The notes under the pieces are model-generated. The model had not been told where the DNA came from. It saw only the letters and a list, made by a program, of their open reading frames with translations, and made no database searches. Both the position numbers and the translations under genes were made by a program. A DNA stretch of 64,000 bases from assembly GCF_032444005.1 (NCBI RefSeq), contig NC_091285.1, forward strand, positions 683,860,001 to 683,924,000. Reading direction: 5' to 3'. This DNA comes from Ranitomeya imitator. Its lineage: Eukaryota. Positions 7,518 to 48,414 of the stretch are shown here, in pieces. The stretch's first letter is position 1; every line of letters begins with the position of its first letter.

Positions 7518-7899
7518 GTTGCATTGCTTGTATATTAATAATTTTTTATTTTATTTATATAGCACCAAAATATGCAACACCGTACAATAATTCACCAGTT
7601 ACAGGAGGAGCGAGAGTCCGGATCACTAACTACAATCTTTAAGGAAATAGGGGACACAATAAGTAGAAAGTGCTTGTCATGTACGGTTCAGCCATCATTA
7701 ATTTTTCTACAGTTTTTCTGCATCGGTATTATCATTAAGGCCTCTCATGACTTATTTTACAGACTCAGGTAAATTTCGAATTTCTCATGTTATGTGTGTT
7801 TTGTCGTAAAAATTAATTTGCTGATATTCTTGCTTATTGCAATTTCTCCAGAAATCTATCTATCTAGATATTTGTTGGGAATCTCTCTCAGGCAAAAGT

Positions 7900-8249: not shown

Positions 8250-8660
8250 CATGTTTTCTGGCAATTTAAGTAACTATGTTAAATAAGACAATACCTCAAA
8301 ATAAATGAAAATAGACTCATAAAATTATTTTTTTATTACTAATGTTTCATGAAAGTCATTTTTTAACTGCAATGAGCTCACTAACACACACTAAAATCGA
8401 TTATTCTTCCCTGTGAAGCTTCTCGGTACATTTACGCTTGCGAGTAGCATCTGGAATGTCTCTCTGAAGCCTCCAACAGCATTCTGCCATCATTGTAATG
8501 CTCCATCTTTCCTGGTATCTTCTTTCCATCTCCTTAATGTCATGGTGGAATCGTTCACCTTGCTCTTTACTCACAGCTCCCAAATTTTCAGGAAAGTTGT
8601 CAAGATGGGAATGGAATGGAGGAAATGCACTTTCAAACTCATCAGGCAACCTTTTCTCTC
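8250..8660 (-). mobile_element. DNA transposase C-terminal fragment, probably Chapaev3/CMC-like; duplicate of 15210-15700
   Basis: HSHLDNFPENLGAVSKEQGERFHHDIKEMERRYQERW in ORF 8401-8649. Family assignment is from memory. Confidence 0.55.
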
Positions 8661-8853
8661 GTGCATCCCCTACTCATATTTCACCAGAAATCTTAAAAGT
8701 GGCAAAATGATGCAATTTTCCCTACTTCTGAGCATTGCTAGTTTGTATTATTGAGGTTTGTGAATTAAAAAAAATCAACAAATTTTAAAGTTAAGAAATT
8801 CGCAAAACTTCAGTTCCTGAGTTCAGTTTCAGAGTCCAGAGTGCTAACCATTA

Positions 8854-11800
8854 ACATAGTAACATAGTAACATAGTTAGTAAGGCCGAAAAAAGACATTT
8901 GTCCATCCAGTTCAGCCTATATTCCATCATAATAAATACCCAGATCTACGTCCTTCTACAGAACCTAATAATTGTATGATACAATATTGTTCTGCTCCAG
9001 GAAGACATCCAGGCCTCTCTTGAACCCCTCGACTGAGTTCGCCATCACCACCTCCTCAGGCAAGCAATTCCAGATTCTCACTGCCCTAACAGTAAAGAAT
9101 CCTCTTCTATGTTGGTGGAAAAACCTTCTCTCCTCCAGACGCAAAGAATGCCCCCTTGTGCCCGTCACCTTCCTTGGTATAAACAGATCCTCAGCGAGAT
9201 ATTTGTATTGTCCCCTTATATACTTATACATGGTTATTAGATCGCCCCTCAGTCGTCTTTTTTCTAGACTAAATAATCCTAATTTCGCTAATCTATCTGG
9301 GTATTGTAGTTCTCCCATCCCCTTTATTAATTTTGTTGCCCTCCTTTGTACTCTCTCTAGTTCCATTATATCCTTCCTGAGCACCGGTGCCCAAAACTGG
9401 ACACAGTACTCCATGTGCGGTCTAACTAGGGATTTGTACAGAGGCAGTATAATGCTCTCATCATGTGTATCCAGACCTCTTTTAATGCACCCCATGATCC
9501 TGTTTGCCTTGGCAGCTGCTGCCTGGCACTGGCTGCTCCAGGTAAGTTTATCATTAACTAGGATCCCCAAGTCCTTCTCCCTGTCAGATTTACCCAGTGG
9601 TTTCCCGTTCAGTGTGTAATGGTGATATTGATTCCCTCTTCCCATGTGTATAACCTTACATTTATCATTGTTAAACCTCATCTGCCACCTTTCAGCCCAA
9701 GTTTCCAACTTATCCAGATCCATCTGTAGCAGAATACTATCTTCTCTTGTATTAACTGCTTTACATAGTTTTGTATCATCTGCAAATATCGATATTTTAC
9801 TGTGTAAACCTTCTACCAGATCATTAATGAATATGTTGAAGAGAACAGGTCCCAATACTGACCCCTGTGGTACCCCACTGGTCACAGCGACCCAGTTAGA
9901 GACTATACCATTTATAACCACCCTCTGCTTTCTATCACTAAGCCAGTTACTAACCCATTTACACACATTTTCCCCCAGACCAAGCATTCTCATTTTGTGT
10001 AGCAACCTCTTGTGCGGCACGGTATCAAACGCTTTGGAAAAATCGAGATATACCACGTCCAATGACTCACCGTGGTCCAGTCTATAGCTTACCTCTTCAT
10101 AAAAACTGATTAGATTGGTTTGACAGGAGCGATTTCTCATAAACTCATGCTGATATGGAGTTAAACAGTTATTCTCATTGAGATAATCCAGAATAACATC
10201 CCTCAGAAACCCTTCAAATATTTTACCAACAATAGAGGTTAGACTTACTGGCCTATAATTTCCAGGTTCACTTTTAGAGCCCTTTTTGAATATTGGCACC
10301 ACATTTGCTATGCGCCAGTCCTGCGGAACAGACCCTGTCGCTATAGAGTCACTAAAAATAAGAAATAATGGTTTATCTATTACATTACTTAGTTCTCTTA
10401 GTACTCGTGGGTGTATGCCATCCGGACCCGGAGATTTATCTATTTTAATCTTATTTAGCCGGTTTCGCACCTCTTCTTGGGTTAGATTGGTGACCCTTAA
10501 TATAGGGTTTTCATTGTTTCTTGGGATTTCACCTAGCATTTCATTTTCCACCGTGAATACCGTGGAGAAGAAGGTGTTTAATATGTTAGCTTTTTCCTCG
10601 TCATCTACAACCATTCTTTCCTCACTATTTTTTAAGGGGCCTACATTTTCAGTTTTTATTCTTTTACTATTGATATAGTTGAAGAACAGTTTGGGATTAG
10701 TTTTACTCTCCTTAGCAATGTGCTTCTCTGTTTCCTTTTTGGCAGCTTTAATTAGTTTTTTAGATAAAGTATTTTTCTCCCTATAGTTTTTTAGAGCTTC
10801 AATGGTGCCATCCTGCTTTAGTAGTGCAAATGCTTTCTTTTTACTGTTAATTGCCTGTCTTACTTCTTTGTTTAGCCACATTGGGTTTTTCCTATTTCTA
10901 GTCCTTTTATTCCCACAAGGTATAAACCGCTTACACTGCCTATTTAGGATGTTCTTAAACATTTCCCATTTATTATCTGTATTCTCATTTCTGAGGATAT
11001 TGTCCCAGTCTACCAGATTAAGGGCATCTCTAAGCTGTTCAAACTTTGCCTTCCTAAAGTTCAATGTTTTTGTGACTCCCTGACAAGTCCCCCTAGTGAA
11101 AGACAGGTGAAACTGTACAATATTGTGGTCGCTATTTCCTAAATGCCCAACCACCTGCAGATTTGTTATTCTGTCAGGTCTATTAGATAGTATTAGGTCT
11201 AAAAGTGCTGCTCCTCTGGTTGGATTCTGCACCAATTGTGAAAGATAATTTTTCTTGGTTATTAGCAGAAACCTGTTGCCTTTATGGGTTTCACAGGTTT
11301 CTGTTTCCCAGTTAATATCCGGGTAGTTAAAGTCCCCCATAACCAGGACCTCATTATGGGTTGCAGCTTCATCTATCTGCTTTAGAAGTAGACTTTCCAT
11401 GCTTTCTGTTATATTTGGGGGTTTGTAACAGACCCCAATGAGAATTTTGTTACCATTTTTCCCTCCATGAATTTCAACCCATATGGACTCGACATCCTCA
11501 TTCCCTTCGCTAATATCCTCCCTTAAAGTGGACTTTAGACAAGACTTTACATAGAGACAAACCCCTCCTCCTCTCCGATTTTTACGATCCTTTCTAAACA
11601 GACTGTAACCCTGTAAGTTAACTGCCCAGTCATAGCTTTCATCTAACCATGTCTCGGTTATTCCCACTATGTCAAAGTTACCTGTAGATATTTCTGCTTC
11701 TAGTTCTTCCATCTTGTTTGTCAGGCTTCTGGCGTTTGCGAGCATGCAGTTTAGAGGATTTTGTTTTGTTCCAATCTCCTCACTGTGGATTGTTTTAGAA

Positions 11801-11911
11801 ATGTTCTTACCTCCCTTCTGAGTATGTTTTCCTGGGTCGTCTTTGTTCGAGTCTAATGTTTTTCTTCCCGTCCCCTCTTCTTCTAGTTTAACGCCCTCCT
11901 GATGAGTGTAG
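8854..11911 (-). mobile_element. CR1 LINE, 5'-truncated at the end of ORF1, with CATTA target-site duplication
   Basis: Octamer tail at 8854-8875. The ORF1 end TLIRRALN* is at about 11884-11910. CATTA occurs at 8849-8853 and 11912-11916. Confidence 0.95.
8965..11745 (-). CDS. CR1 ORF2: APE endonuclease plus reverse transcriptase, uninterrupted 926 aa
   Basis: ITETW, MGDFN and SDH endonuclease motifs; YLDFSKAFD, PQGSVLGP and FADD RT motifs. Confidence 0.95.
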   Translation of the reverse strand: MLANARSLTNKMEELEAEISTGNFDIVGITETWLDESYDWAVNLQGYSLFRKDRKNRRGGGVCLYVKSCLKSTLREDISEGNEDVESIWVEIHGGKNGNKILIGVCYKPPNITESMESLLLKQIDEAATHNEVLVMGDFNYPDINWETETCETHKGNRFLLITKKNYLSQLVQNPTRGAALLDLILSNRPDRITNLQVVGHLGNSDHNIVQFHLSFTRGTCQGVTKTLNFRKAKFEQLRDALNLVDWDNILRNENTDNKWEMFKNILNRQCKRFIPCGNKRTRNRKNPMWLNKEVRQAINSKKKAFALLKQDGTIEALKNYREKNTLSKKLIKAAKKETEKHIAKESKTNPKLFFNYINSKRIKTENVGPLKNSEERMVVDDEEKANILNTFFSTVFTVENEMLGEIPRNNENPILRVTNLTQEEVRNRLNKIKIDKSPGPDGIHPRVLRELSNVIDKPLFLIFSDSIATGSVPQDWRIANVVPIFKKGSKSEPGNYRPVSLTSIVGKIFEGFLRDVILDYLNENNCLTPYQHEFMRNRSCQTNLISFYEEVSYRLDHGESLDVVYLDFSKAFDTVPHKRLLHKMRMLGLGENVCKWVSNWLSDRKQRVVINGIVSNWVAVTSGVPQGSVLGPVLFNIFINDLVEGLHSKISIFADDTKLCKAVNTREDSILLQMDLDKLETWAERWQMRFNNDKCKVIHMGRGNQYHHYTLNGKPLGKSDREKDLGILVNDKLTWSSQCQAAAAKANRIMGCIKRGLDTHDESIILPLYKSLVRPHMEYCVQFWAPVLRKDIMELERVQRRATKLIKGMGELQYPDRLAKLGLFSLEKRRLRGDLITMYKYIRGQYKYLAEDLFIPRKVTGTRGHSLRLEERRFFHQHRRGFFTVRAVRIWNCLPEEVVMANSVEGFKRGLDVFLEQNNIVSYNY

Positions 11912-12955
11912 CATTACACCATGGAACCAGCTGATGTGCCCAATCACTGACCTTCTTCATGACGCTATTGACATATGGTCTTGTCCACAGGTATGTAGTG
12001 TGATAAGACATTCACATATATCAATATTTGCATCTATACTTATTTATGTATTTTTCTTGTATTTTCACAACTTTTCATTATTTTACGTAATTACATATTT
12101 TGATCTACATTAATGTTTTGAGATTCCGCACTCCTTAACATTTTATTTTTACTTTGTTTTCATATCTTTTGATATGTTCACATGCATTCATATTTTATTA
12201 TATTTATCATATGTTAATTTAGATTGATTTTCTTTCTCACATTCAGTCATATGATTTTTACTTTAGGTTTCACGTTCCTCAGCATTTTCATTGTTTATAA
12301 TTGGTTATCTGTGCACAAATAGAGTCTCCTCTGCAGGTTTGATACAACCCTCAGATGTATGGATTGTGCTTGAACGCGCGTCGGGGCTTGGCACCGCATC
12401 CTGCAGGCTGTAATGCCTATTCTGTTACTCTGATTTTCATCTCAGCACTTTCTTATTCATTTACCTGGCTGTCTCCGCTGTTTCGGGCTCGGTCTGTCAT
12501 ACAACATATTGTAAGCAGTAGACTTGTGTTACCATATAACCCTTTACATATTTTTATCCTGTTAATAAATTATTTGTGTTTTTTTATTTTGATAAGACAT
12601 TGTTTCATATTGTATTTACATAATCTGCCATCCTAATGATATCATGTTTTTATTGTACATGTGACATGATAGTGAATTTTGCTTCTTACTTCCCTTGCTT
12701 GGAATTATTATTATTACTGAGTTTCCTCCTTAGCTCCTGCTCTTTCTGTTTTTTTTGTGTGGTGTGGCGCCACCTGCTGGTTCCCCATTTGTTATTCATT
12801 TTTATGTAATATTTTATTAAGAACTTTAAATGCCATTATGTTTGAGCCCTTCTTTGATTTTCTGGTCTTTTGCCACACCGACAGGGAGAAAAGTATCCTT
12901 CCACAGACTAGTATCAAAATATTATCTGAATCAGTGGCCAGTGGAGTTATCACAT

Positions 12956-25759: not shown

Positions 25760-26220
25760 GCAAGCTCTTTTGGCTTCCAGATATTTGTTCAGTCTCCCAT
25801 GATTTATTTTCCGTCGTCATCAATAATTTCTCATTGGTAATGTTATGTGTGTTTTCCTGCCAGTCTGTTTTTGCACTTGAATATCAAAATTAATTATATG
25901 GCAAAATAAAGCTAAATATTATCTATTTTAACATTATTTCCTATTTTCATTTAGGACCACAAATGACTGCTACAAAACTATTTCAATTGCATTACCGTGA
26001 ATTATTTTACTGACTCATCAACTATATTTCTAATTGCTGATTTTGTTTTTTTTTGCCATTAAAATATATTTACTGAAATTCTCATTTATACATATTTCAC
26101 CAGAAATCTTAAAAGTGGCAAAATGATGCAATTTTCCCTACTTCTGAGCATTGCTAGTTTGTATTATTGAGGTTTGTGAATTAAAAAAAATCACCAAAAT
26201 ATAAAGTTAAGAAATTCGCA

Positions 26221-26292
26221 AAATCCCACCGAGATTTGAACTCGGATCGCTGGATTCAGAGTCCAGAGTGCTAACCATTACACCATGGAACC
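26221..26292 (-). tRNA. TRNAQ-CUG: tRNA-Gln(CTG) variant with an altered 3' acceptor strand (GGGATTT instead of GGGACCT)
   Basis: A small deletion at the 3' junction turns G1-C72 and G2-C71 into G-U pairs; the rest is canonical. Confidence 0.75.
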
Positions 26293-27822
26293 AACTGATG
26301 TTCCCAATCACTGACCTTCTTCATGATGCTATTGACATATCGTCCTGTCCACAGGTATGTAGTGTGATAAGAAATTCACATATATCAATATTTGCATCTA
26401 TACTTATTTATGTATTTTTCTTGTATTTTCACTACTTTTCATTATTTTATGTATTTACATATTTTGATCTACATTATTGTTTTCTGATTCCGCACTCTTT
26501 AACAATTTATTTTTACTTTGTTTTCATATCTTTTGATATATTCACATGCATTCATATTTTATTATAATTATCATATGTTAATTTAGAATGATTTTCTTTC
26601 TCACATTCAGTCATATGATTTTTACTTTAGGTTTCACGTTCCTCAGCATTTTCATTGTTTATAATTGGTCAGCTGTGCACATATAGAGTCTCCTCTGCAG
26701 GTTTGATACAACCCTCACGTGCATGGATCGTGCTTGAACGCGCGTCGGGGTTTGGCACCGCATCCTGCAGGCTGTAATGTCTATTCTGTTACTCTGATTT
26801 TCATCTCAGCACTTTCTTATTCATTTACTTGGCTGTCTCCGCTGTTTCGGGCTCGGTCTGTCATACAACATATTGTAAGCAGTAGGCTTGTGTTACCATG
26901 TAAGCCTTTACATACTTTTATCCTGTTAATAAATTATTTGTGTTTTTTTTATTTTGATAAGAAATTGTTTCATATTGTATTTATGTAATCTGCCATCCTA
27001 ATGGTTTCATGTTTTTATTGTACATGTGACATGATAGTGAATTTTGCTTCTTACTTCCCTTGCTTGGAATTATTATAATTACTGAGTTTCCTCTTTATCT
27101 CCTGCTCTTTCTGTTTGTTTTTTGTTGTGGTGTGGCGCCACCTGCTGGTTCCCCATTTGTTAATCATTTTTATGTAATATTTTATTAAGAACTTTGAATG
27201 CCATTATGTTTGAGCCCTTCTTTGATTTTCTGGTCTTTTGCCACACCGACAGGGAGAAAAGTATCCTTCCACAGATTAGTACCAAAATATTATCTGAATC
27301 AGTGACCAATGGAGTTATCACATAATCCCCCAGATGATCTTTCTTCTGTTTCATTATCCAAAGTGTTTTGGTTAATTAATGTGATGACATCTCGAAATAG
27401 AAAAGAGTAGAAAAAGTTTTCATTGAGTCAAGAAGGCAAAGGATGAGAGAAGATCAAGGACACAAAGGAGAGAATAAGAATGTGGTGAAATCTTCTGTAT
27501 TTTTTCTTAATCATCTATTGACCACATATATTTTTCAATCACATTAGCCAAGGTGCAATTTTTCCACCGATCGGACAATTCCTTCAGCAAATCAAATACT
27601 GTTGAGAAATATCAGGTAGAGCGGTTGGACGTTCAAAGGTGCTGACTTACAATCTGCTGCCAACTGATGTTTTTTGGGGGAAATGTACTTCATGAGGCTA
27701 AATATATGACGACAGACCATGTTGTACTGTAGAAAAAGAAAGCAGCCCACCATAAAGTCTCCTGACAGCACTGGGAATCAAACCCACGGCCCCAAAGAGA
27801 CTGGAATAGTCAAACATCAGTT

Positions 27823-27896
27823 GGCCGGTTAGCTCAGTTGGTTAGAGCGTGGTGCTAATAACGCCAAGGTCGCGGGTTCGATCCCCGTACGGGCCA
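27823..27896 (+). tRNA. TRNAI-AAU: tRNA-Ile(AAT), canonical
   Basis: GGCCGGTTAGCTCAGTTGGTTAGAGCGTGGTGCTAATAACGCCAAGGTCGCGGGTTCGATCCCCGTACGGGCCA, followed by a T4 terminator. Confidence 0.97.
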
Positions 27897-28613
27897 GGTG
27901 ACTTTTGTTTACCAAAACAAATAAAGTGTAATTATTTTTATTATTAATATAACATCAACAAATTCTGCAGCACTCTACAATTGAGCGTGACATGTACAGA
28001 GAATAAAGGCATTAGAGAGTGACACAGATCAACAGTTACAGGAGGAGCGAGGGTCCTGCTCACAAGCTACAATCTGTAAGGAAATAGGGGGTCACATTAG
28101 GGAGAAAGTGCTGTCATGTGTCGTCCGGCCATCATCAGGGCATTTCAAATAATAAATAATAATAATACGGAGAACGATCAGTAATATGAAGGTTCTGGGC
28201 GCAGGGGCCGGCGGTTACATACAGCTGGACTCTCACTCATGGTGTTTAACTCATTATTTTATGCAGTTTTTAATTGTGTAAAAAAAACTCTGCAAAATTC
28301 CTGAAATAATTAACTTGATGCAGATTTGAAGGAAAGGAATGATTCATTAATTCAAATCAACAAATGCGCGAGAAGTAGGAAATCTCAATTACATTGCTGA
28401 TACTGGAAAAAGGCAGGAAAAGGAAAAAGTCCCAAATAGGAAAACTGCACGAGTGGTGATGTGAGCGTGTGGAGCGGAGTCCTGACGGTGAGGACATTAC
28501 ACGCTTTGAGGATTTGCCAACATACAGGGCTGAATTCCATAATTGATAAATATGAGCGCAGGGATAGGAGTTCTCTCCTTGTCAGGCGGCACAATGACTT
28601 ATGTCCCAGTACA

Positions 28614-28695
28614 GGTAGCGTGGCCGAGCGGTCTAAGGCGCTGGATTAAGACTCCAGTCTCTTCGGGGGTGTGGGTTTGAATCCCACCGCTGCCA
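28614..28695 (+). tRNA. TRNAL-AAG: tRNA-Leu(AAG) variant, possibly inactive
   Basis: G37A, B-box C56T (GTTTGA) and a T-stem C>T change. Confidence 0.65.
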
Positions 28696-29164
28696 ACAAG
28701 CTCTTTTGCCTTCCAGATATTTGTTCAGTCTCCCGTGATTTATTTTCCGTCGTCATCAATAATTTCTAATCTGTAACATTATGTGTGTTTTCCTGCCAGT
28801 CTATCTTTGCACTTGAATATCAAAATTATTTATATGGATATATAAATCTAAATATTATCTATTTTAACATTATTTCCTTTTTTTATTTAGGACCACAAAT
28901 GACTGCTACAAAACTATTTCAGTTGCATTCCCGTGAATTATTTTACTGACTCATCAACTATATTTCTAATTGCTGATTTTATGTTTTTTTTTGCCATTAA
29001 AATATATTTACTGAAATTCTCATTTATACATATTTCACCAGAAATCTTAAAAGTGGCAAAATGATGCAATTTTCCCTACTTCTGAGCATTGCTAGTTTGT
29101 ATTATTGAGGTTTGTGAATAAAATAAATCACCAAAATATAAAGTTAAGAAATTTGCAAAACTTT

Positions 29165-29236
29165 AGGTCCCACCGAGATTTGAACTCGGATCGCTGGATT
29201 CAGAGTCCAGAGTGCTAACCATTACACCATGGAACC
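29165..29236 (-). tRNA. TRNAQ-CUG: tRNA-Gln(CTG), canonical
   Basis: Identical to the 72-nt consensus. Confidence 0.97.
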
Positions 29237-29723
29237 AGCTATGTGACTCTGTTCACGATGATATTTATATGTGGTCGGGTCCACATGTATGTACTGTGAT
29301 ATGAAATTCATATATATCAATATTTGCATCTATACTTATTTATATATTTTTCTTGTGTTTTCGCTATTTTTCATTATTTTATGTATTTACATATTTTGCT
29401 CTACATTAATGTTTTGTGATTCTGCACTCCTTAACATTTTGTTTCTACTTTGTTTTCATATCTTTTGATATATTCACATGCATTCATATTTTATTATATT
29501 TATCATAAGTTAATTTAGATTGATTTTCTTTCTCACATTCAGTCATATGATTTTTCCTTTAGGCTTCACGTTCCTCAGCATTTTCATTGTTTATAATTGG
29601 TCAGCTGTGCACATATAGAGTCTCCTCTGCAGGTTTGATACAACCCTCACGTGTATGCATTGTGCTTGAACGCGCGTCGGGGTTTGGCACCGCATCCTGC
29701 AGGCTGTAATGTCTATTCTGTTA

Positions 29724-30128
29724 GGCTACTTTCACACTAGCGTCGTAGTCGCAGTGCGTCGGGCCAACGTACCGATGCATACTGTGGAAGTGCCGCACAA
29801 CGGGGGCAGCGGATGCATTTTTCCAGCACATCCGCTGCCCCATTTTGAGTTGCGGGGAGGTGGGGGCGGAGTTCCGGCCGCAAATGCACGGTCAGAAATG
29901 TCGGACATGACCCTCAAAAAAAGCAATGTTTTTTTTGTTCGGACGGTCCGCCACAACACGACGCAACTGTCGCACGATGGTTGCGACGTGTGGCAATGCG
30001 CCGCAATGCGTCATTAATGTTAGTCAATGGGGAAAAAACGCATCCTGGAGACAACTTTGCAGGATACGTTTTTTACCCAAAATGACGCATTGTCATGTAT
30101 CCCAAACGACGCTAGTGTGAAAGTAGCC
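29724..30128. mobile_element. MITE with 22-bp TIR GGCTACTTTCACACTAGCGTCG, flanked by a 108-bp direct duplication
   Basis: TIRs at both ends; 29616-29723 is repeated at 30130-30237. Confidence 0.85.
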
Positions 30129-30796
30129 TTAGAGTCTCCTCTGCAGGTTTGATACAACCCTCACGTGTATGCATTGCGCTTGAACGCGCGTCGGGGTTTG
30201 GCACCGCATCCTGCAGGCTGTAATGTCTATTCTGTTACTCTGATTTTCATCTCAGCACTTTCTTATTCATTTACTTGGCTGTCTCCACTGTTTCGGTCTC
30301 GGTCTGTCATACAACATATCGCAAGCAGTAGGCTTGTGTTACCATATAACCCTTTGCATACTTTTATCCTGTTAATATATTCTTTGTGTTTTTTTATTTT
30401 GATAAGACATTGTTTTATATTGTATTTACATTATCTGCCGTCCTAATGGTTTCAGGTTTTTATTGCACATGTGACATGCTGTTGAATTTGGCTTCTTACT
30501 TCCTTGTGTGGAATTATTATTATTACCGAGTTTCCTCCTTATCTCCTGCTCTTTCTGTTTGTTTTTGTGGTGTGGCGCCACCTGCTGGTTCCCCATTTGT
30601 TAATCATTTTTATGTAATATTTTATTAAGAACTTTAAATGCCATTATGTTTGAGCCCTTCTTTGATTTTCTGGTCTTTGTATCCTTCCACAGATTAGTAT
30701 CAAAATATTATCTGAATCAGTGACCAATGGAGTTATCAAATAATCCCCCAGATGATCTTTCTCCTGTTTCATTATCCAAACTGTTTTGGTCAATTA

Positions 30797-31130
30797 GGGT
30801 ACGTTCACACACACGACTTTTTTGCTGCGTATTTTTGCTGCTTTTTTTATGCTAATTTTCAGCTGCTTTTTACAGTACCAGCAAAGCCTGTGAGATTTCA
30901 TAAATCTCATGCCCACACATTGGGTTTTTGTTTGATCAGTATTTTCTGCTTTGCTGCGTTTTTTGGACACAGGGCATGTCACTTCTTTCAGCGTTTTTGC
31001 TGCGTTTTTGCAGCGTTTTTTCACCCATTGACTTGAATGGGTGATGGAAAAAACGCTACAAAAACGCAGCAAAAACGCATGTAGCATCATGGCCAGCAGG
31101 AAGTGATGTCACAGCCAAGAGATTAGGGGT
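30797..31130. mobile_element. One-ended T2-type MITE with an adjacent spacer deletion; mirrored at about 36380-36716
   Basis: TTAGGGTACGTTCACAC terminus. About 300 bp of the spacer seen in the 27.4-27.7 kb unit is missing. Confidence 0.65.
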
Positions 31131-31334
31131 GTGGTTAGTGAGGTGTCCATAGTGACAGTGAGCTATTGTGAGGTGTCCTGTCCAACTGATCTTTTTGGGG
31201 GGGAAATGTACTTCATGAGGCTAAATATATGACGACAGACCATGTTGTACTGTAGAAGAAAAAATAAAGTCTCCTGACAGTACTGGGAATCAAACCCACG
31301 ACCCCAAAGAGACTGGAATAATCAAACATTGAAC

Positions 31335-31408
31335 GGCCGGTTAGCTCAGTTGGTTAGAGCGTGGTGCTAATAACGCCAAGGTCGCGGGTTCGATCCCCGT
31401 ACGGGCCA
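31335..31408 (+). tRNA. TRNAI-AAU: tRNA-Ile(AAT), canonical
   Basis: Identical to 27823-27896. Confidence 0.97.
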
Positions 31409-31841
31409 GGTGACTTTTGTTTACCAACATAAATAAAGTGTAATTATTTTTTATTATTTATATAGCATCAAAAAATTCTGGAGCACTTTACAATTGAGCG
31501 TGACATGTACAGAGAATAAAGGCATTACAGAGTGACACAAATCACCAGTTACAGGAGGAGCGAGGGTCCTGCTCAAAAACTACAATCTGTAAGGAAATAG
31601 GGGGGACACATTAGGGAGAAAGTGCTGACATGTGTCGTCCGGCCATCATCAGGGCATTTCAAATAATAAATAATAATACGGAGAACGATCATTAATATGA
31701 AGGTTCTGGGCGCAGGTGCCGGCGGTTACATACAGCAGGACTCTCACTCATGGTGGTTAACTCATTATTTATGCAGTTTTTAATTATGTAAAAACATTCT
31801 GCAAAATTCCTGAAGTAATTAACTGGATACCAATTCAATCC

Positions 31842-31923
31842 GGTAGCGTGGCCGAGCGGTCTAAGGCGCTGGATTAAGGCTCCAGTCTCTTCGGGGGCGT
31901 GGGTTCGAATCCCACCGCTGCCA
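31842..31923 (+). tRNA. TRNAL-AAG: tRNA-Leu(AAG), canonical
   Basis: Identical to 25678-25759; T5 terminator downstream. Confidence 0.97.
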
Positions 31924-33177
31924 AAATGCTTTTTATCCAATATAGTCTCCCGTGATTTATTTAACATTGTCATTAATCCTTATGTGTGTTTTCCCGCCAG
32001 TCTTGTTTCTCACTTAAAAAATAAATATCATCTATTTTCACATTATAATTTATTTTTTATTTTTATTTTATGACCGCAAAGGAAGGCTAGAAAATGTTTG
32101 AAATTGCATTTGCTTTTTCCGTTAAAAATATTTCTAGATATTCAACATATTTTTTTTTCAACATGAGTGGGACTAGAAACAACTAATTGCACTGGCAGTA
32201 TCTCCCTTTTTTAGGCCTTATTTTCTATTTTGGATTCTGCTATTTATTTAGTTTTTTTATTTAGCCCTCACATTGTGCACCTGTAAGGTTTTTATAGATT
32301 TTTGGGGGCTTAACATATGAATACAGTCTTTTTTTATTGCTGATCTCTAGTGATGATCGAGTGCTCTGTACGGGAATCGAACAGGTCGGACGCTCGGACG
32401 GCCTCAACTCGAGTACCGAACATGATCGCAGTCAATGGGAACTCAAGCATTTTCCCCGAGATCCTAACAGGAGGGCAGAGGGGGAACTAAAATCACTGAA
32501 ATAGATGGAAACAGCATGTGGAAGACCCCTGGAAGCATCTCTGACTCCCAGGTCGCTGATGGGAACAATGGTGTCAGAGTATTACTCCACTTTTGCAGAT
32601 TCACAATAAAACATCTAAAAACAAAGAGAGAAAATAGATTTTGCAGGAAAAAATTATATAGAGACTATATAATGTAGACAAGAGAAAAGAAAAAGCCCCC
32701 ATGCAGAGGGTAAAGCCATTGGCCAGGTGAAACTGTGCCTCCTGTGAGAGCACAACAAACACGCTCATCCATGAGACCTAGCTTCCTGTCCCACTTTGCA
32801 GGGAGACGCGGGACACCACTCTTGAAGCCAGAATAATGTGAATAGGTGGTCAGTTAGATGGATGATAATGCTTCCATTATGTTTCTCAGCACCACCCTGT
32901 CTTCCACAATGTTTTAAGAGGCCCTCATATCCTCATCTATGTGTCTTCCAGGATGTATTGCAGTCCCTCCTTCTAATTTTTGGCAGCCCATCCACATAGC
33001 GCATTGGCTTTAGGGCTCTATGAGTCCATCTGATACTTCTAACAGAACATGCATGAGGCCCTCCTTTATGTCTATGATATGTCCGAGATAAGGTAGTAAA
33101 ATGTTAGAATTACATTTATCGATGACTATCGGGGGGGGTGACGTTTTATTCTCCCCTCTACTATTTCATCTACTGTA

Positions 33178-34741
33178 CAGTCATGGACAAAAATTTTGAG
33201 AATGAGACAAATATTAATTTTTCCAAAGTCTACTGCTTCATTTTTTCTAATGGCAATTTGCATATACTCCTGAATGTCAGAGTGATCAGCCTAACAGCAA
33301 TTACTGTACTTGCAAAGTCAATATTTGTCCAGAAAATGAACTTTAACCCCCAAAACACTTTTCAACCTCATTGCAGTCCTGCCTTAAAAGGAGCAGCTAA
33401 CATCGTTTTAGTGATTGATCCATTAACACAGGTGTGGGTGTTGATGAGGACAGGGCTGGCGATCAGTCATGATTAAGTAAGAATGACATCACTGGACACT
33501 TTAAAAGGAGGCTGGTGCTTGGTATCATTGTTTCTCTTCAGTTAACCATGGTTATCTCTAAAGAAACACGTGCAGCCATCATTGTACTGCACAAAGATGG
33601 CCTAACAGGGAAGAGTATCGCAGCTACAAAGATTGCACCTCAGTCAACAATCTATCGCATCATCAAGAACTTCAAGGAGAGAGCTTCCATTGTTGTCAAA
33701 AAGGCTCCAGGGCGCCCAAGAAAGACCAGCAAGCGCCAGGACCGGATCTTAAAACTGTTTCAGCTGCGGGATCGGACTACCAGCAGTGCCGAGCTTGCTC
33801 AGGAATGGCAGCGGGCTGGTGTGAGTGCTCCTGCACGAACTGTGAGGCGGAGACTCTTTGAGCAAGGCCTGGTATCAAGGAGGGCAGCAAAGAAGCCACT
33901 TCTCTCCAGAAAAAACATCAGGGACCGACTGATATTCTGCAAAAGGTACAGGGAGTGGACTGCTGAGGACTGGGGCAAAGTCATTTTCTCTGATGAATCC
34001 CCTTTTCGATTGTTTGGGACATCTGGAAAACAGCTTATTCGGAGAAGAAGAGGTGAGCGCTACCACCAGTCTTGTCTCATGCCGACTGTAAAGCATCCTG
34101 AAACCATTCATGTGTGGGGTTGCTTCTCACCCAAAGGAATCGGTTCACTCACAGTCTTGCCTAAAAACACAGCCATGAATAAAGAATGTTTCCAGAATGT
34201 CCTCCAAGAGCAACTTCTCCCAACCGTCCAAGAGCAGTTTAGCGCCCAACAATGCCTTTTCCAGCATGATGGAGCACCTTGCCATAAAGCAAAGGTGATA
34301 ACTAAATGGCTCACGGAACAAAACATAGAGATTTTGGGTCCATGGCCTGGAAACTCCCCAGATCTTAATCCCATTGAGAACTTGTGGTCAATCATCAAGA
34401 GACAGGTGGACAAACAAAAACCAACAAATTCTGGCAAAATGCAAGCATTGATTATGCAAGAATGGACTGCTATCAGTCAGGATTTGGTCCAGAAGTTGAT
34501 TGAGAGCATGCCAGGGAGAATTGCAGAGGTCTTGAAGAAGAAGGGTCAACACTGCAAATATTGACTTGCTGCATTAACTCATTCTAACTGTCCATATAAC
34601 CTATTGGTACTCATAATATGATTGCAATTATATTTCTGTATGTGATATAAACATCAGACAAACACTAATAAAAACCAGAGGGCAGCAGATCATGTGAAAA
34701 TATAATTTTGGTGTCATCCTCAAAAATTTTGGCCATGACTG
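33178..34741 (+). mobile_element. Tc1-family transposon, DD35E type, with TA TSDs and ~30-38-bp imperfect TIRs
   Basis: TA|CAGTCATGG...CCATGACTG|TA. Confidence 0.95.
33548..34564 (+). CDS. Intact Tc1-like transposase (338 aa from ATG 33548), DD35E
   Basis: GRPRKT, FSDES, QHDGAPCH and SPDLNPIE motifs; 35 residues between the second D and the E. Confidence 0.92.
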   Translation: MVISKETRAAIIVLHKDGLTGKSIAATKIAPQSTIYRIIKNFKERASIVVKKAPGRPRKTSKRQDRILKLFQLRDRTTSSAELAQEWQRAGVSAPARTVRRRLFEQGLVSRRAAKKPLLSRKNIRDRLIFCKRYREWTAEDWGKVIFSDESPFRLFGTSGKQLIRRRRGERYHQSCLMPTVKHPETIHVWGCFSPKGIGSLTVLPKNTAMNKECFQNVLQEQLLPTVQEQFSAQQCLFQHDGAPCHKAKVITKWLTEQNIEILGPWPGNSPDLNPIENLWSIIKRQVDKQKPTNSGKMQALIMQEWTAISQDLVQKLIESMPGRIAEVLKKKGQHCKY

Positions 34742-35588
34742 TAGTCATAGGCAATGGGGAAAAACAGTGAGAGATTGCCCGGCTATTATGGGGCGAAGAA
34801 GGTGATTTTTTGGGGGCTTTTTCTTTTGTCTTGTATACATTATATAGTCTCTATATAATTTTTTCCTGCAAAATCTATTTTCTCTCTTTGTTTTTAGATG
34901 TTTTATTGTGAATCTGCAAAAGTGGAGTAATACTCTGACACCATTGTTCCCATCAGCGACCTGGGAGTCAGAGATGCTTCCAGGGGTCTTCCACATGCTG
35001 TTTCCATCTATTTCAGTGATTTTAGTTCCCCCTCTGCCCTCCTGTTAGGATCTCGGGGAAAATGCTTGAGTTCCCATTGACTGCGATCATGTTCGGTACT
35101 CGAGTTGAGGCCGTCCGAGCGTCCGACCTGTTCGATTCCCGTACAGAGCACTCGATCATCACTAGAGATCAGCAATAAAAAAAGACTGTATTCATATGTT
35201 AAGCCCCCAAAAATCTATAAAAACCTTACAGGTGCACAATGTGAGGGCTAAATAAAAAAACTAAATAAATAGCAGAATCCAAAATAGAAAATAAGGCCTA
35301 AAAAAGGGAGATACTGCCAGTGCAATTAGTTGTTTCTAGTCCCACTCATGTTGAAAAAAAAATATGTTGAATATCTAGAAACATTTTTAACGGAAAAAGC
35401 GAATGCAATTTCAAACATTTTCTAGCCTTCCTTTGCGGTCATAAAATAAAAATAAAAAATAAATTATAATGTGAAAATAGATGATATTTATTTTCTAAGT
35501 GAGAAACAAGACTGGCGGGAAAACACACATAAGGATTAATGACAATGTTAAATAAATCACGGGAGACTATATTGGATAAAAAGCATTT

Positions 35589-35670
35589 TGGCAGCGGTGG
35601 GATTCGAACCCACGCCCCCGAAGAGACTGGAGCCTTAATCCAGCGCCTTAGACCGCTCGGCCACGCTACC
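35589..35670 (-). tRNA. TRNAL-AAG: tRNA-Leu(AAG), canonical (mirror of 31842)
   Basis: Exact reverse complement of the 82-nt consensus. Confidence 0.97.
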
Positions 35671-36103
35671 GCTACAAATTGGAATCAAGTTAATTCTTTC
35701 AGGAATTTTGCAGAATGTTTTTACATAATTAAAAACTGCATAAATAATGAGTTAAACACCATGAGTGAGAGTCCTGCTGTATGTAACCGCCGGCACCTGC
35801 GCCCAGAACCTTCATATTACTGATCGTTCTCCGTATTATTATTTATTATTTAAAATGCCCTGATGATGGCCGGACGACACATGTCAGCACTTTCTCCCTA
35901 ATGTGTCCCCCCTATTTCCTTACAGATTGTAGTTTTTGAGCAGGACCCTCGCTCCTCCTGTAACTGGTGATCTGTGTCACTCTGTAATGCCTTTATTCTC
36001 TGTACATATCACGCTCAATTGTAAAGTGCTCCAGAATTTTTTGATGCTATATAAATATTAAAAAATAATTACACTTTATTTATGTTGGTAAACAAAAGTC
36101 ACC

Positions 36104-36177
36104 TGGCCCGTACTGGGATCGAACCCGCGACCTTGGCGTTATTAGCACCACGCTCTAACCAACTGAGCTAACCGGCC
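36104..36177 (-). tRNA. TRNAI-AAU: tRNA-Ile(AAT) with one T-stem mismatch
   Basis: GATCCCAGTAC instead of GATCCCCGTAC. Confidence 0.85.
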
Positions 36178-37386
36178 GTTCAATGTTTGATTATTCCAGT
36201 CTCTATGAGGCCGTGGGTTTGATTCCCAGTGCTGTCAGGAGACTTTATTTTTTTTTTCTACAGTACAACATGGTCTGTCGTCATATATTTAGCCTCATGA
36301 AGTACATTTCCCGCCAAAAAAAGATCAGTTGGACAGGACACCTCACAATGGCTCACTGTCACTATGGACACCTCACTAACCACACCCCTAATCTCTTGGC
36401 TGTGACATCACTTCCTGCTGGCCATGATGCTACATGCGTTTTTGCTGCATTTTTGTAGCGTTTTTTCCATCACCCATTCAAGTCAATGGGTGAAAAAACG
36501 CTGCAAAAACGCAGCAAAAACGCTGAAAGAAGTGACATGCCCTGTGTCCAAAAAACGCAGCAAAGCAGAAAATACTGATCAAACAAAAACCCAATGTGTG
36601 GGCATGAGATGTCTGAAATCTCATAGGCTTTGCTGGTACTGTAAAAAGCAGCTGAAAATTAGCATAAAAAAATCAGCAAAAATACGCAGCAAAAAAGTCG
36701 TGTGTGTGAACGTACCCTAATTGACCAAAACAGTTTGGATAATGAAACAGGAGAAAGATCATCTGGGGGATTATGTGATAACTCCACTGGTCACTGATTC
36801 AGATAATATTTTGATACTAATCTGTGGAAGGATACAAAGACCAGAAAATCAAAGAAGGGCTCGAACATAATGGCATTTAAAGTTCTTAATAAAATATTAC
36901 ATAAAAATGATTAACAAATGGGGAACCAGCAGGTGGCGCCACACCACAAAAACAAACAGAAAGAGCAGGAGATAAGGAGGAAACTCGGTAATAATAATAA
37001 TTCCACACAAGGAAGTAAGAAGCCAAATTCAACATCATGTCACATGTGCAATAAAAACCTGAAACCATTAGGACAGCAGATAATGTAAATACAATATGAA
37101 ACAATGTCTTATCAAAATAAAAAAAACACAAAGAATATATTAACAGGATAAAAGTATGTAAAGGGTTATATGGTAACACAAGCCTACTGCTTACAATATG
37201 TTGAATGACAGACCGAGACCGAAACAGTGGAGACAGCCAAGTAAATGAATAAGAAAGTGCTGAGATGAAAATCAGAGTAACAGAATAGACATTACAGCCT
37301 GCAGGATGCGGTGCCAAACCCCGACGCGCGTTCAAGCGCAATGCATACACGTGAGGGTTGTATCAAACCTGCAGAGGAGACTTTAA

Positions 37387-37786
37387 GGCTACTTTCACAC
37401 TAGCGTCGTTTGGGATACGTCACAATGCGTAGTTTTGGGTAAAAAACGTATCTTGCAAAGTTGTCTCCAGGATGCGTTTTTTCCCCAACATTAATGACGC
37501 ATTGCTGCGCATTGCCACACGTCACAACCGTCATGCGACAGTTGCGTCTTGTTGTGGCGGACCGTCCGAATAAAAAAAAAACGTTGCTTTTTTTGAGCGT
37601 CGTGTCCGACATTTCTGACCGTGCATTTGCGGCCGGAACTCCATCCCCACCTCCCCGCAACTCAAAATGGGACAGCGGATGTGCTGGAAAAATGCATCCA
37701 CTGCCCCCGTTGTGCGGCACTTCCACAGTATGCGTCGGTACGTCGGCCCGACGCACTGGGACTACGACGCTAGTGTGAAAGTTGCC
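37387..37786. mobile_element. Mirror copy of the 29724-30128 MITE, also flanked by the ~108-bp duplication
   Basis: Same TIRs and same duplicated flank in reverse orientation. Confidence 0.85.
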
Positions 37787-38282
37787 TAACAGAATAGACA
37801 TTACAGCCTGCAGGATGCGGTGCCAAACCCCGACGCGCGTTCAAGCGCAATGCATACACGTGAGGGTTGTATCAAACCTGTAGAGGAGACTCTATATGTG
37901 CACAGCTGACCAATTATAAACAATGAAAATGCTGAGGAACGTGAAGCCTAAAGTAAAAATCATATGACTGAATGTGAGAAAGAAAATCAATCTAAATTAA
38001 CTTATGATAAATATAATAAAATATGAATGCATGTGAATATATCAAAAGATATGAAAACAAAGTAAAAACAGAATGTTAAGGAGTGCGGAATCACAAAACA
38101 TTAATGTAGATCATGTAGATCAAAATATGTAAATACATAAAATAATGAAAAATAGCGACAACACAAGAAAAATATATAAATAAGTATAGATGCAAATATT
38201 GATATATATGAATTTCATATCACACTACATACATGTGGACCCGACCATACATAAATATCATCATGAACAGGGTCATATAGTT

Positions 38283-38354
38283 GGTTCCATGGTGTAATGG
38301 TTAGCACTCTGGACTCTGAATCCAGCGATCCGAGTTCAAATCTCGGTGGGACCT
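38283..38354 (+). tRNA. TRNAQ-CUG: tRNA-Gln(CTG), canonical
   Basis: 72-nt consensus. Confidence 0.97.
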
Positions 38355-38770
38355 GAACTTTTATAATTTGTTGATTTTTTTTTTTTATTCACAAATCTCA
38401 ATAATACAAACTAGCAAATTGCATCATTTTGCCACTTTTAAGATTTCTGGTGAAATATGAATAAATAACAATTTCAGTAATGGCAAAAAACGCATCACAT
38501 CAGCAATTAGAAATACGGATGATGAGTGTAAAATAATTCATTGTAATGCAATTGAAATAGTTTTGTATCAGTCATTTGTGATCCTAAATAAAAAAAGGAA
38601 ATAATGTTAAAATAGATAATATTTATCTTTACATTGCCATACAAATAATTTTGATATTCAAGTGCAAAAATAGACTGGCAGGAAAACACACATAACGTTA
38701 CCAATTAGAAATTATTGATGACGACGGAAAATAAATCACGGGAGACTGAACAAATATCTGGAAGGCAAAA

Positions 38771-38835
38771 GAACCCACGCCCCCGAAGAGACTGGAGCCT
38801 TAATCCAGCGCCTTAGACCGCTCGGCCACGCTACC
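38771..38835 (-). pseudogene. 3'-truncated tRNA-Leu(AAG)
   Basis: The last ~17 nt (part of the T arm and the acceptor strand) are deleted. Confidence 0.9.
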
Positions 38836-39086
38836 TGTGCCACGTCCCTGCGCTCATGTTTAGGAATGATGAAATTCAGCCCTGTATGATAGCAAATCCT
38901 CACAGCGTGTAATGTCCTCACCATCAGGACTCCGCTCTGCGCGCTCACATCACCACTCGTGCAGTTTTCCTACTTAGGACTTTTTCCTTTTCCTGCCTTT
39001 TTCCAGTATCAGCAAAGTAAATGAGATTTCCTGCTTCTCGTGCATTTGTTGATTTGAATTAATGAATCATTCCTTTCCTTCAAATC

Positions 39087-44776: not shown

Positions 44777-44814
44777 CAAATCTGCATCAAGTTAATTCTT
44801 TCAGGAAGTTTCCC

Positions 44815-47836: not shown

Positions 47837-47910
47837 AGGCACTGCTGAGATTCGAACTCAGGATCTCCTGTTTACTAGACAGGCGCTTTAACCAACTAAG
47901 CCACAGCGCC
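47837..47910 (-). tRNA. TRNAT-AGU: tRNA-Thr(AGT), structurally intact
   Basis: GGCGCTGTGGCTTAGTTGGTTAAAGCGCCTGTCTAGTAAACAGGAGATCCTGAGTTCGAATCTCAGCAGTGCCT; all stems pair; T4 terminator. Confidence 0.96.
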
Positions 47911-48414
47911 AGACACTGCTGCACTTATAAATAATCGTATAACAGGAGACTGTGGGTTCAAATCCGGTGGCGGTGATGACAATATTTCACTTCTTCTCGT
48001 TATGGCAATTTTCCATTTTTACACTTTTCTTTTCTCCTCCCCTTATTCAAACAGTCATAACTTTAGGATTTTTTGGTAGAAATAGCCATATCACGACATA
48101 TTCTGCAAATTGTACATTAGAATGACACCATTTATTTTATCATGCAGCGCTGGAGACTAAGAATAGAAATTCCAAGTGAGGCAAAACTGAAAAACAAAAG
48201 TGCAAATACCCCCGTATCTGTCAATATGGGGTAGATGCAATGTTCTGATTGCCTCTTATTGCATTTTTTCAAGTGTTTTAGGGTAGCGAAAAAAGTCATT
48301 GTATTATAATATTATTTTATTTATCTAGCACCAACATATTCTGCAGAACTGTACAATTAAGAGGGGACATGTACAGACAATGAAGACAGTACAGAGGAAC
48401 TGATAATTCACCAG

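What the first reader, a model, noticed from the sequence alone, without database searches (positions are those of the whole stretch)
8650..39086. Tandem tRNA gene array with a Leu(AAG)/Gln(CTG)/Ile(AAT) unit undergoing birth-and-death evolution
A ~2.9-3.5-kb unit (Leu on +, Gln on - about 0.5 kb downstream, Ile on + about 1.5 kb further) recurs at least five times. Copies range from canonical to truncated or interrupted. Amphibian tRNA arrays are known (the Xenopus 3.18-kb cluster), but I do not recognise this gene set and arrangement. The array explains most of the non-TE sequence here.
Basis: partly seen in the sequence, partly recalled or inferred. Interest (0 to 1): 0.7.

Follow-up and report, generated by a model that had tools for sequence, protein, structure and literature searches.

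The report
Decaying frog tRNA gene cluster
This stretch of a poison-frog genome is an ordinary but well-preserved cluster of transfer-RNA genes (Leu, Gln, Ile) that grew by repeated local copying, once in reverse, and whose copies range from intact, apparently active genes to mutated, truncated and transposon-split ones.

Summary
ARAGORN and Rfam both tRNA genes in the window. Spacers align between units at 80-98% identity, so these are copies of one roughly 3-kb unit.

"Tandem" is only partly right:
- Only units A (25.5-28.5 kb) and B (28.5-31.8 kb), plus a partial third (to 32.7 kb), lie head to tail.
- 34.8-39.1 kb is an inverted copy of 28.3-32.7 kb, so the two form a 4.4-kb-arm palindrome.
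- Older copies at 7.6-14.7, 16.3-21 and 48-54 kb are broken by CR1, Tc1 and other insertions.

Eight genes are canonical. The other eight carry lesions such as C56T, a 3' deletion, a 24-25-nt deletion or a CR1 in the D-loop.

Gene bodies are nearly invariant (0.9% mismatches) while the 20 nt upstream are hypervariable (28%). This is the published signature of purifying selection plus transcription-associated mutagenesis, so several copies are probably active. Birth-and-death evolution is supported, with some local homogenisation.

Heterogeneous tRNA gene clusters are already known from frogs and fish. This is a new member of a known kind, and of modest interest. The scan's other notes on this window (palindrome, CR1 in Gln) agree.

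The parts
7589..7857 (+). Oldest left-hand remnant (c0/c1 start). 7589-7700 matches the Ile-downstream part of the unit and 7743-7857 matches the Leu-Gln spacer. The Leu gene is deleted.
   Evidence: nhmmer with unit A; blastn
8667..8853 (+). Copy c1: Gln 3' flank plus the 3' part of a dead tRNA-Gln gene (about 8812-8853, gene on the - strand), which has two internal deletions totalling about 18 nt
8854..11911 (-). CR1-type LINE (endonuclease + reverse transcriptase ORF 8965-11745) inserted in the D-loop/A-box of the c1 Gln gene. It has a 5-bp target duplication (CATTA) and an 8-nt microsatellite tail at its 3' end.
   Evidence: Pfam; junctions read
11908..12957 (+). Copy c1: 5' end of the split Gln gene (11912-11929) and the Gln-Ile spacer, 95.3% identical to unit A 26276-27323
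14131..14667 (+). Copy c1: rest of the spacer (96% identical to A 27319-27691). The copy ends about 130 bp before the place of Ile. 12958-14130 between the two pieces is an insertion carrying 25/27-bp minisatellites.
16325..17014 (+). Copy c2, left part: decayed Leu pseudogene 16350-16428 (25.8 bits, below threshold) and canonical Gln-CTG 16887-16958 (- strand)
17015..19584 (+). Insertion in c2 holding Tc1/mariner transposase fragments (ORFs 18016-18390 and 18333-19061). It replaces about 500 bp of unit spacer.
   Evidence: Pfam
19585..20952 (+). Copy c2, right part: spacer and decayed Ile-AAT 20583-20656 (46 bits; 5 substitutions including G53; no T4 run within the 40 nt read downstream)
25481..28543 (+). 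Unit A: canonical Leu-AAG 25678-25759; Gln-CTG 26221-26292 (- strand) whose 3' end was changed by a 7-bp deletion (last two acceptor pairs become G-U, with a T4 run at the gene end); canonical Ile-AAT 27823-27896
28544..31835 (+). Unit B: Leu-AAG 28614-28695 with G37A, C48T and C56T; canonical Gln-CTG 29165-29236 (- strand); canonical Ile-AAT 31335-31408. It has an extra 406 bp (29724-30129) between 108-bp direct repeats.
31840..32701 (+). Partial unit C: canonical Leu-AAG 31842-31923 and about 0.8 kb, ending at the inner edge of the left palindrome arm
32702..34810 (.). Palindrome spacer: 474 bp, then a Tc1 element 33176-34743 (48-nt terminal inverted repeats, 349-aa transposase ORF 33515-34564), then 67 bp
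34811..39085 (-). Inverted copy of 28321-32701 (93.9% over 4395 columns): canonical Leu 35589-35670; Ile 36104-36177 with a C63A T-stem mismatch; canonical Gln 38283-38354 (+ strand); truncated Leu about 38774-38835 (a 24-25-nt deletion removes the 3' T-arm and acceptor strand)
39086..44776 (-). Ty3/Gypsy LTR retrotransposon (LTRs 39086-39835 and 44027-44776, 99.2% identical; 1401-aa gag-pol ORF) inserted about 30 bp inside the outer end of the right arm, with a 5-6-bp target duplication
44777..44812 (-). Last about 30 bp of the right palindrome arm, beyond the Gypsy (33/35 match to 28294-28328). The true arm is therefore about 28294-32701.
47837..47910 (-). tRNA-Thr-AGT, the best-scoring tRNA gene of the window (70.5 bits). 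It belongs to the cluster but not to the repeated unit.
48297..53795 (+). Old unit remnants (71-86% identical): 48297-48419, 49154-49255, 50137-50277, 52450-52883, 53259-53499 (with Gln-CTG 53396-53467 on the - strand, one acceptor-stem change C5A) and 53647-53795

Best explanation
This is a cluster of ordinary nuclear, RNA-polymerase-III-transcribed tRNA genes. One roughly 3-kb unit (Leu-AAG +, Gln-CTG -, Ile-AAT +) was copied locally several times.

The order of events, inferred from spacer identity, is:
- the remnants at 48-54 kb (about 25% diverged);
- copy c2 (12-17%);
- the split of the A/c1 lineage from the B lineage (6-8%);
- A versus c1 (4-5%);
- an inverted duplication of unit B plus partial unit C, which made a palindrome with 4.4-kb arms (2-3% in the inner part);
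- late insertions: a Gypsy element (LTRs 0.8% apart), a CR1 element (0.65% from another copy in the window) and a Tc1 element.

Copies then decay independently by point mutation, small deletions and transposon insertion. Selection keeps the gene bodies of at least some copies unchanged. The very high divergence just upstream of the genes is the known footprint of transcription-associated mutagenesis. From this I infer, without direct evidence, that several copies are transcribed in the germ line. Local gene conversion or unequal exchange has homogenised a few tracts.

Shown here: the genes, the homology of the spacers, the inversion, the lesions, the transposon target duplications and the substitution pattern. 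Inferred: the duplication mechanism (unequal crossing-over for A-B-C; a fold-back or template-switch type event for the palindrome), the transcriptional activity, and selection as the cause of gene identity.
For: tRNA calls agree between ARAGORN and Rfam. T4-5 runs lie 5-12 nt downstream of the canonical genes.

Spacer homology and copy map. The ML tree joins B and the inverted arm with 100/99 support and places c2 outside them.

Lesions were read directly.

Transposon insertions have target duplications and identifiable domains. Arm homology resumes beyond the Gypsy.

Gene versus flank divergence: Gln B versus c2 is 0/72 in the gene against 16/150 in the 3' flank; Gln B versus the 53-kb copy is 1/72 against 44/124.

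Summed over six young pairs: gene 4/456 (0.9%), inner 5' flank 30/108 (28%), far flanks 9.4%. The gene is lower than the far flanks with p=3e-13, and the inner 5' flank is higher with p=1.5e-7.

Leu C versus its inverted copy has 9/40 mismatches upstream of the gene, inside arms that differ by 2% in their inner part and are 99-100% identical just downstream of this gene (p=1.4e-7). This matches the pattern published for active tRNA genes (PMC6130373).

Contigs of two species labels carry the unit A spacer in several variants.
Against: No expression or Pol III occupancy data could be obtained; no listed run holding the stretch is on record as RNA. Activity therefore rests on a substitution signature that was calibrated on orthologues in mammals, flies and plants, not on frog paralogues.

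The paired comparisons share lineages and are not independent.

Identity of gene bodies could partly reflect short conversion tracts rather than selection.

The A-c1 sister relation is suggested by identity but not resolved in the tree.

tRNAscan-SE was not available. The copy number outside this window is unknown.
Confidence: 0.85

Rival explanations
1. Concerted evolution is the main force. Frequent gene conversion or unequal crossing-over between units, rather than selection on each gene, keeps the tRNA genes identical, as in classical tandem arrays.
For: The Gln 3' flank of A and B differs at only 2/189 positions, while neighbouring segments differ by 5-8%. The site pattern switches at the Gln gene. 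The inner 600 bp of the palindrome arms are 99-100% identical.
Against: Spacers remain 5-20% diverged. Copy-specific lesions persist next to canonical copies: the three changes in the B Leu gene, the deletion in the A Gln gene and the truncated Leu. The isolated old copies c2 and the one at 53 kb keep a perfect or near-perfect Gln gene inside flanks that are 11-35% diverged. A conversion tract would not skip the 30 nt upstream of Leu C.
Confidence: 0.1
2. The unit is the cargo of a mobile element (for example a Helitron or a composite DNA transposon) that spreads tRNA genes.
For: c1, the closest relative of unit A by identity, lies on the other side of the older copy c2. This is not what simple unequal crossing-over gives. 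The region is full of transposons.
Against: No terminal repeats, target duplications or transposase belong to the unit ends. The unit boundaries differ between copies. All copies lie in one 46-kb stretch. Every transposon found is an insertion into the unit with its own target duplication.
Confidence: 0.03
3. This is an assembly artefact: a falsely expanded repeat or a false fold-back palindrome.
For: Long-read assemblies can create inverted duplications. Only one assembly was seen.
Against: The arms differ by 149 substitutions and several indels, and are separated by a 2.1-kb spacer holding a Tc1 element. Tandem units differ by 5-8%. Contig variants from the short-read run X1 (possibly the assembly's own sample) show many of the letters that set copy A apart from B and the inverted arm, at the same positions.
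Confidence: 0.02

Closest known systems
Heterogeneous tRNA gene (tDNA) clusters of vertebrates with many tRNA genes, as surveyed in clawed frog and zebrafish (Bermudez-Santana et al. 2010, PMC2888827)
   Same: Several different tRNA genes recur together. They arise by local duplication, are interspersed with pseudogenes, lie in an unstable and transposon-rich setting, and turn over fast.
   Different: That survey reports nearly all neighbouring pairs in Xenopus as parallel. Here Gln is antiparallel inside the unit and one block is inverted. The Leu-AAG/Gln-CTG/Ile-AAT set was not found named in any searchable paper.
Xenopus laevis 3.18-kb tandem repeat with 8 tRNA genes, and other oocyte-type tRNA repeats (cited in PMC1635290, refs 61-62)
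   Same: A frog locus with a roughly 3-kb unit that carries several different tRNA genes and is repeated head to tail.
   Different: The gene set differs (3 genes, not 8). Only about 2.3 tandem units are present, diverged by 5-8% and partly decayed, rather than a large homogeneous array. Oocyte-specific use was not tested. The gene list of the 3.18-kb unit could not be read here because the paper is not held.
Active tRNA loci under transcription-associated mutagenesis (Thornlow et al. 2018, PMC6130373)
   Same: The gene body is conserved, and the hypervariable inner 5' flank peaks within about 20 nt upstream.
   Different: It is seen here between paralogues of one array rather than between orthologues or in polymorphism data.
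tRNA-derived SINEs
   Same: Repeated tRNA-like sequences in a transposon-rich genome.
   Different: The genes here are full-length and canonical, and a terminator follows each within 5-12 nt. The repeated entity is a 3-kb multi-gene unit with no tail or target duplication.

Membership tests
Eukaryotic nuclear tRNA gene (Pol III type 2 promoter) | Cloverleaf sequence and structure scoring above the curated threshold | tested here: met
   14 hits of 46-70 bits against a threshold of 29. ARAGORN makes the same 14 calls.
Eukaryotic nuclear tRNA gene (Pol III type 2 promoter) | Internal A box (positions 8-19) and B box (52-62, with G53 and C56) | tested here: met
   Read in the sequences. Both boxes are intact in the 8 canonical copies. 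They are broken in B-Leu (C56T), c2-Ile (G53 changed), the truncated Leu and c1-Gln (CR1 in the A box).
Eukaryotic nuclear tRNA gene (Pol III type 2 promoter) | A run of four or more T shortly downstream (Pol III terminator) | tested here: met
   A T4-T5 run lies 5-12 nt after each canonical gene. None lies within the 40 nt read after the decayed c2 Ile.
Eukaryotic nuclear tRNA gene (Pol III type 2 promoter) | Transcribed by Pol III and processed to mature tRNA | not testable with these tools
   No listed run holding the stretch is on record as RNA. The only evidence is the indirect mutagenesis signature.
Tandem tDNA repeat of the Xenopus 3.18-kb type | Head-to-tail repeats of a multi-tRNA unit with homologous spacers | tested here: met
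   A-B-partial C has periods of 2936 and 3228 bp and spacers 92-95% identical.
Tandem tDNA repeat of the Xenopus 3.18-kb type | The same gene content (8 tRNA genes per unit) | tested here: not met
   The unit holds three genes. The Xenopus unit holds eight, according to the title cited in PMC1635290.
Tandem tDNA repeat of the Xenopus 3.18-kb type | A large, homogeneous array | tested here: not met
   In this window there are only about 2.3 tandem units. The other copies are inverted, separated or decayed, at 71-98% identity. The genome-wide count was not tested.
Multigene family under birth-and-death evolution | Duplicates of clearly different ages together with pseudogenes and lost copies | tested here: met
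   The identity classes are 71-77%, 83-88%, 92-96% and 97-98%. Of 16 gene copies, 8 are canonical and 8 carry lesions.
Multigene family under birth-and-death evolution | Copies not homogenised with their neighbours | tested here: inconclusive
   This is mostly true, since spacers are 5-20% diverged. One A-B tract is 98.9% identical, and the inner palindrome arms are 99-100% identical.
tRNA-derived SINE | A tRNA-related head fused to a body and a tail, dispersed with target duplications | tested here: not met
   Canonical full-length tRNAs are followed at once by terminators. The homology extends over 3-kb units confined to one locus.

The most novel reading that the evidence does not exclude
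The Leu/Gln/Ile unit could be a lineage-specific amplified tRNA repeat of poison frogs, comparable to the oocyte-type tRNA and 5S arrays of Xenopus. This locus would then be one decaying member of a much larger family. Its graded series of paralogues and its 4.4-kb palindrome would give a natural experiment on how Pol III genes mutate through their own transcription and then die.
Probability: 0.12. Interest if true: 0.45.

Novelty: new member of a known kind. Interest (0 to 1): 0.27.

Why it matters
The finding mainly serves as annotation. It tells which of 16 tRNA gene copies in a hard-to-annotate, transposon-rich frog region are likely to work and which are dead.

It also shows the transcription-associated mutation footprint between young paralogues, inside palindrome arms that are otherwise nearly identical. 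Such arrays could therefore be used to infer tRNA gene activity in species without Pol III data. It does not change what is known about tRNA gene organisation.

Tried and rejected
- nhmmer on the whole window timed out. It was rerun with the 17-bp satellite masked.
- Paper searches for this gene set, for frog tRNA arrays and for poison-frog tRNA content gave nothing specific.
- The Xenopus 3.18-kb paper is not held.
- Sub-threshold Rfam microRNA hits at 6.4, 31.0, 36.5 and 48.5-50.5 kb hit both strands of hairpin repeats far below threshold. I dismissed them as MITE-like palindromes.
- I rejected the idea that the Tc1 element created the palindrome. Its terminal repeats lie inside the spacer, 474 and 67 bp from the arms.
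- I rejected the idea that the arm ends exactly at the Gypsy element. Homology resumes beyond it.
- I weakened the idea that the Gln-flank mosaic is only A-B conversion. Many of the sites that set the inverted arm apart are clustered changes and deletions private to that arm.
- Depth from contigs cannot give copy number.
- The reads tool was given only a tRNA-free spacer (26300-27815), because tRNA genes are nearly identical across vertebrates, humans included (my own knowledge).
Full report
**1. Observation**

ARAGORN and the Rfam tRNA model agree on 14 tRNA genes in the window.

| Gene | + strand | - strand |
|---|---|---|
| Leu-AAG | 25678, 28614, 31842 | 35589 |
| Gln-CTG | 38283 | 16887, 26221, 29165, 53396 |
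| Ile-AAT | 20583, 27823, 31335 | 36104 |
| Thr-AGT | none | 47837 |

In unit A the steps Leu to Gln to Ile are 543 and 1602 bp; in unit B they are 551 and 2170 bp. Leu-to-Leu periods are 2936 and 3228 bp.
- A relaxed Rfam scan adds a decayed Leu at 16350-16428 (25.8 bits).
- A 20-nt Leu pattern finds a sixth Leu copy at 38816-38835 on the - strand (0 matches in 100 shuffles).
- Notes of other agents describe the genome as a poison frog. The run labels I obtained were coded.

**2. Spacers align, so these are copies of one unit**

The evidence is self-BLAST, MAFFT identities and nhmmer with unit A. They give this map:

- **c0/c1:** 7589-7700, 7743-7857 and 8667-8853; then a CR1 element; then 11908-12957; then a 1.2-kb minisatellite-bearing insertion; then 14131-14667.
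- **c2:** 16325-17014; then a 2.6-kb Tc1-containing insertion; then 19585-20952.
- **A:** 25481-28543.
- **B:** 28544-31835.
- **Partial C:** 31840-32701.
- **Spacer:** 32702-34810.
- **Inverted copy of 28321-32701:** 34811-39088.
- **Old remnants:** between 48297 and 53795.

Identities are:

| Pair | Identity |
|---|---|
| A-c1 | 95-96% |
| A-B | 92-95% |
| B-inverted arm | 97-98% (inner part) |
| c2-others | 83-88% |
| 53-kb copy-others | 71-77% |

An ML tree of the segment shared by five copies joins B with the inverted arm (100/99 support) and puts c2 outside them. A-c1 is left unresolved.

**3. "Tandem" is only partly right**

- Only A, B and partial C lie head to tail.
- The block 34811-39088 is the reverse complement of 28321-32701 (93.9% over 4395 columns).
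- The arm really ends about 30 bp further out. A Gypsy element (39086-44776; LTRs 99.2% identical; 5-6-bp target duplication) sits inside the arm, and homology resumes at 44777-44812.
- The spacer holds a Tc1 element with 48-nt terminal repeats (33176-34743) and an uninterrupted 349-aa transposase ORF. The element lies 474 and 67 bp from the arms, so it inserted into an older spacer of about 540 bp and did not create the palindrome.
- The arms are 99-100% identical over the innermost 600 bp and fall to 81-97% in the outer 1 kb.
- The arms carry 149 substitutions and several indels, so a fold-back assembly artefact is very unlikely.
- Another first-stage note of this scan (s1-271913) described the same palindrome, and I confirm it.

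**4. State of each gene**

Canonical copies, identical within each type:
- Leu 25678, 31842 and 35589.
- Gln 16887, 29165 and 38283.
- Ile 27823 and 31335.

Damaged copies:
- **Leu 28614:** G37A, C48T and C56T. C56 is an invariant B-box and T-loop base (established knowledge of Pol III type 2 promoters).
- **Leu about 38774-38835:** a 24-25-nt deletion joins the T-loop directly to the terminator.
- **Leu 16350:** 7-11 substitutions plus an indel.
- **Gln 26221:** a 7-bp deletion replaces the 3' terminal bases. The top two acceptor pairs become G-U, and a T4 run sits at the gene end.
- **Gln of c1:** two internal deletions, and a CR1 LINE in the D-loop/A box with a 5-bp target duplication. This confirms note s1-271985.
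- **Gln 53396:** C5A.
- **Ile 36104:** C63A breaks a T-stem pair (53 against 61 bits).
- **Ile 20583:** five substitutions including G53, and no T4 run within the 40 nt read downstream.

All canonical genes have a T4-5 run 5-12 nt downstream.

**5. Selection and activity**

- Gene bodies are far less diverged than their flanks. Gln B versus c2 is 0/72 against 16/150 in the 3' flank. Gln B versus the 53-kb copy is 1/72 against 44/124.
- Over six young pairs the gene bodies show 4/456 mismatches (0.9%), the 20 nt just upstream show 30/108 (28%), and the far flanks show 9.4%.
- The gene bodies are lower than the far flanks with p=3e-13. The inner 5' flank is higher with p=1.5e-7. The far-flank figure is inflated by one non-homologous stretch, which makes the second test conservative.
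- The clearest case is Leu C against its inverted copy. There are 9 mismatches in the 40 nt upstream, 0/82 in the gene and 0/40 downstream. The surrounding arms differ by about 2% (p=1.4e-7).
- This is the pattern that Thornlow et al. 2018 (PMC6130373) attribute to transcription-associated mutagenesis together with purifying selection. They find it much stronger at active than at inactive tRNA genes.
- I therefore infer that several copies are, or recently were, transcribed in the germ line. This is an inference. No listed run holding the stretch is on record as RNA.

**6. Birth-and-death or concerted evolution?**

- Copies of several ages, independent lesions and diverged spacers fit birth-and-death.
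- There is also local homogenisation. In the 189 bp downstream of Gln, A and B differ at 2 positions (98.9%), while adjacent segments differ by 5-8%.
- The site pattern switches at the Gln gene. On one side A equals B; on the other side B equals the inverted arm.
- Part of that signal comes from clustered changes and deletions private to the outer inverted arm.
- By identity c1 is closest to A, although the older c2 lies between them. At least one duplication was therefore not a simple neighbour-to-neighbour unequal exchange.

**7. Other genomes**

- Contigs of four public runs were laid on the tRNA-free spacer 26300-27815.
- The best run of the same species label gave 65 pieces at mixed identity: 17 at 99% or more, 24 at 95-99% and 24 lower. 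Many of the other letters they carry stand at the positions where copy A differs from B and the inverted arm.
- A run of a second species label gave 37 pieces, 5 of them at 99% or more.
- The spacer family is therefore multi-copy and is shared with a close relative.
- Contigs cannot give copy number.

**8. What is known**

- A survey of eukaryotic tRNA genes states that the clawed frog and zebrafish have mostly heterogeneous clusters. It says local duplication is the prime suspect and that such clusters are dynamic and unstable (PMC2888827).
- Xenopus has oocyte-type repeats that encode several tRNAs, including the 3.18-kb unit with 8 genes (PMC1635290).
- No searchable paper names the Leu-AAG/Gln-CTG/Ile-AAT combination, and I found no frog paper describing it.
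- The unit is not a SINE. It has full-length genes, immediate terminators and 3-kb homologous spacers.

**9. Verdict**

This is a real and correctly located tRNA gene cluster, a new member of a known kind. The word "tandem" overstates the regularity, and the novelty is modest.

**Not done**

tRNAscan-SE, a genome-wide copy count, long-read validation and Pol III occupancy were not done.

Noticed in passing
window 15-3820: A 17-bp satellite of about 218 copies with 88% matches and an extreme strand asymmetry (GC skew about -0.75).
   Followed up: no
window 22406-22667 and 22780-24881: An interstitial run of degenerate telomere-type repeats (TTAGGG variants) lies directly beside a 391-bp satellite (5.5 copies). 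Both sit between the old copy c2 and unit A.
   Followed up: no
window 27695-27815 (also 31229-31323 and 36189-36285): Just upstream of each Ile gene lies a weak inverted match to the 3' half of the Leu gene and its downstream flank (nhmmer E about 1e-5). It may be a very old inverted Leu relic built into the unit.
   Followed up: no
window 29616-30237 (and 37278-37894 in the inverted arm): A 406-bp stretch absent from units A and c1 is flanked by 108-bp direct repeats that are 99% identical. A 73%-identical relative of the 406 bp lies at 7135-7518 beside an old unit remnant. Either it is ancestral and was lost from A/c1 by repeat recombination, or it is an insertion with an unusually long duplication. 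In c1, about 186 bp of unit spacer likewise appear on both sides of the insertion at 12958-14130.
   Followed up: partly
window 4697-5771 vs 8852-9927: Two CR1 LINE copies are 99.35% identical. The family that split the Gln gene was therefore active very recently.
   Followed up: no
window 33176-34743: A Tc1/mariner element with 48-nt terminal inverted repeats and an uninterrupted 349-aa transposase ORF (HTH + DDE_3). It may still be mobile.
   Followed up: partly
window 55704-57134 and 57348-60635: A 260-bp tandem repeat (5.5 copies, 95% matches) lies immediately upstream of an intact 1095-aa hAT transposase ORF (BED finger + hAT dimerisation domain). It may belong to the array-filled hAT family noted elsewhere in this genome (s1-294701).
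   Followed up: no
window 61762-63996: A 744-aa ORF on the - strand shows weak, below-threshold matches to reverse transcriptase and GIY-YIG nuclease domains, a Penelope-like combination. It runs to the window end.
   Followed up: no
window 30984-31085, 36433-36525, 6370-6690, 48475-50508: Hairpin repeats hit plant and animal microRNA models on both strands far below threshold. They look like MITE-type palindromes, and one sits in the B-specific part of the Gln-Ile spacer.
   Followed up: no
window 25678-47910: Three of the four tRNA species in the cluster (Leu-AAG, Ile-AAT, Thr-AGT) have A34 anticodons, which are edited to inosine in eukaryotes (my own knowledge). This is probably a coincidence.
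   Followed up: no
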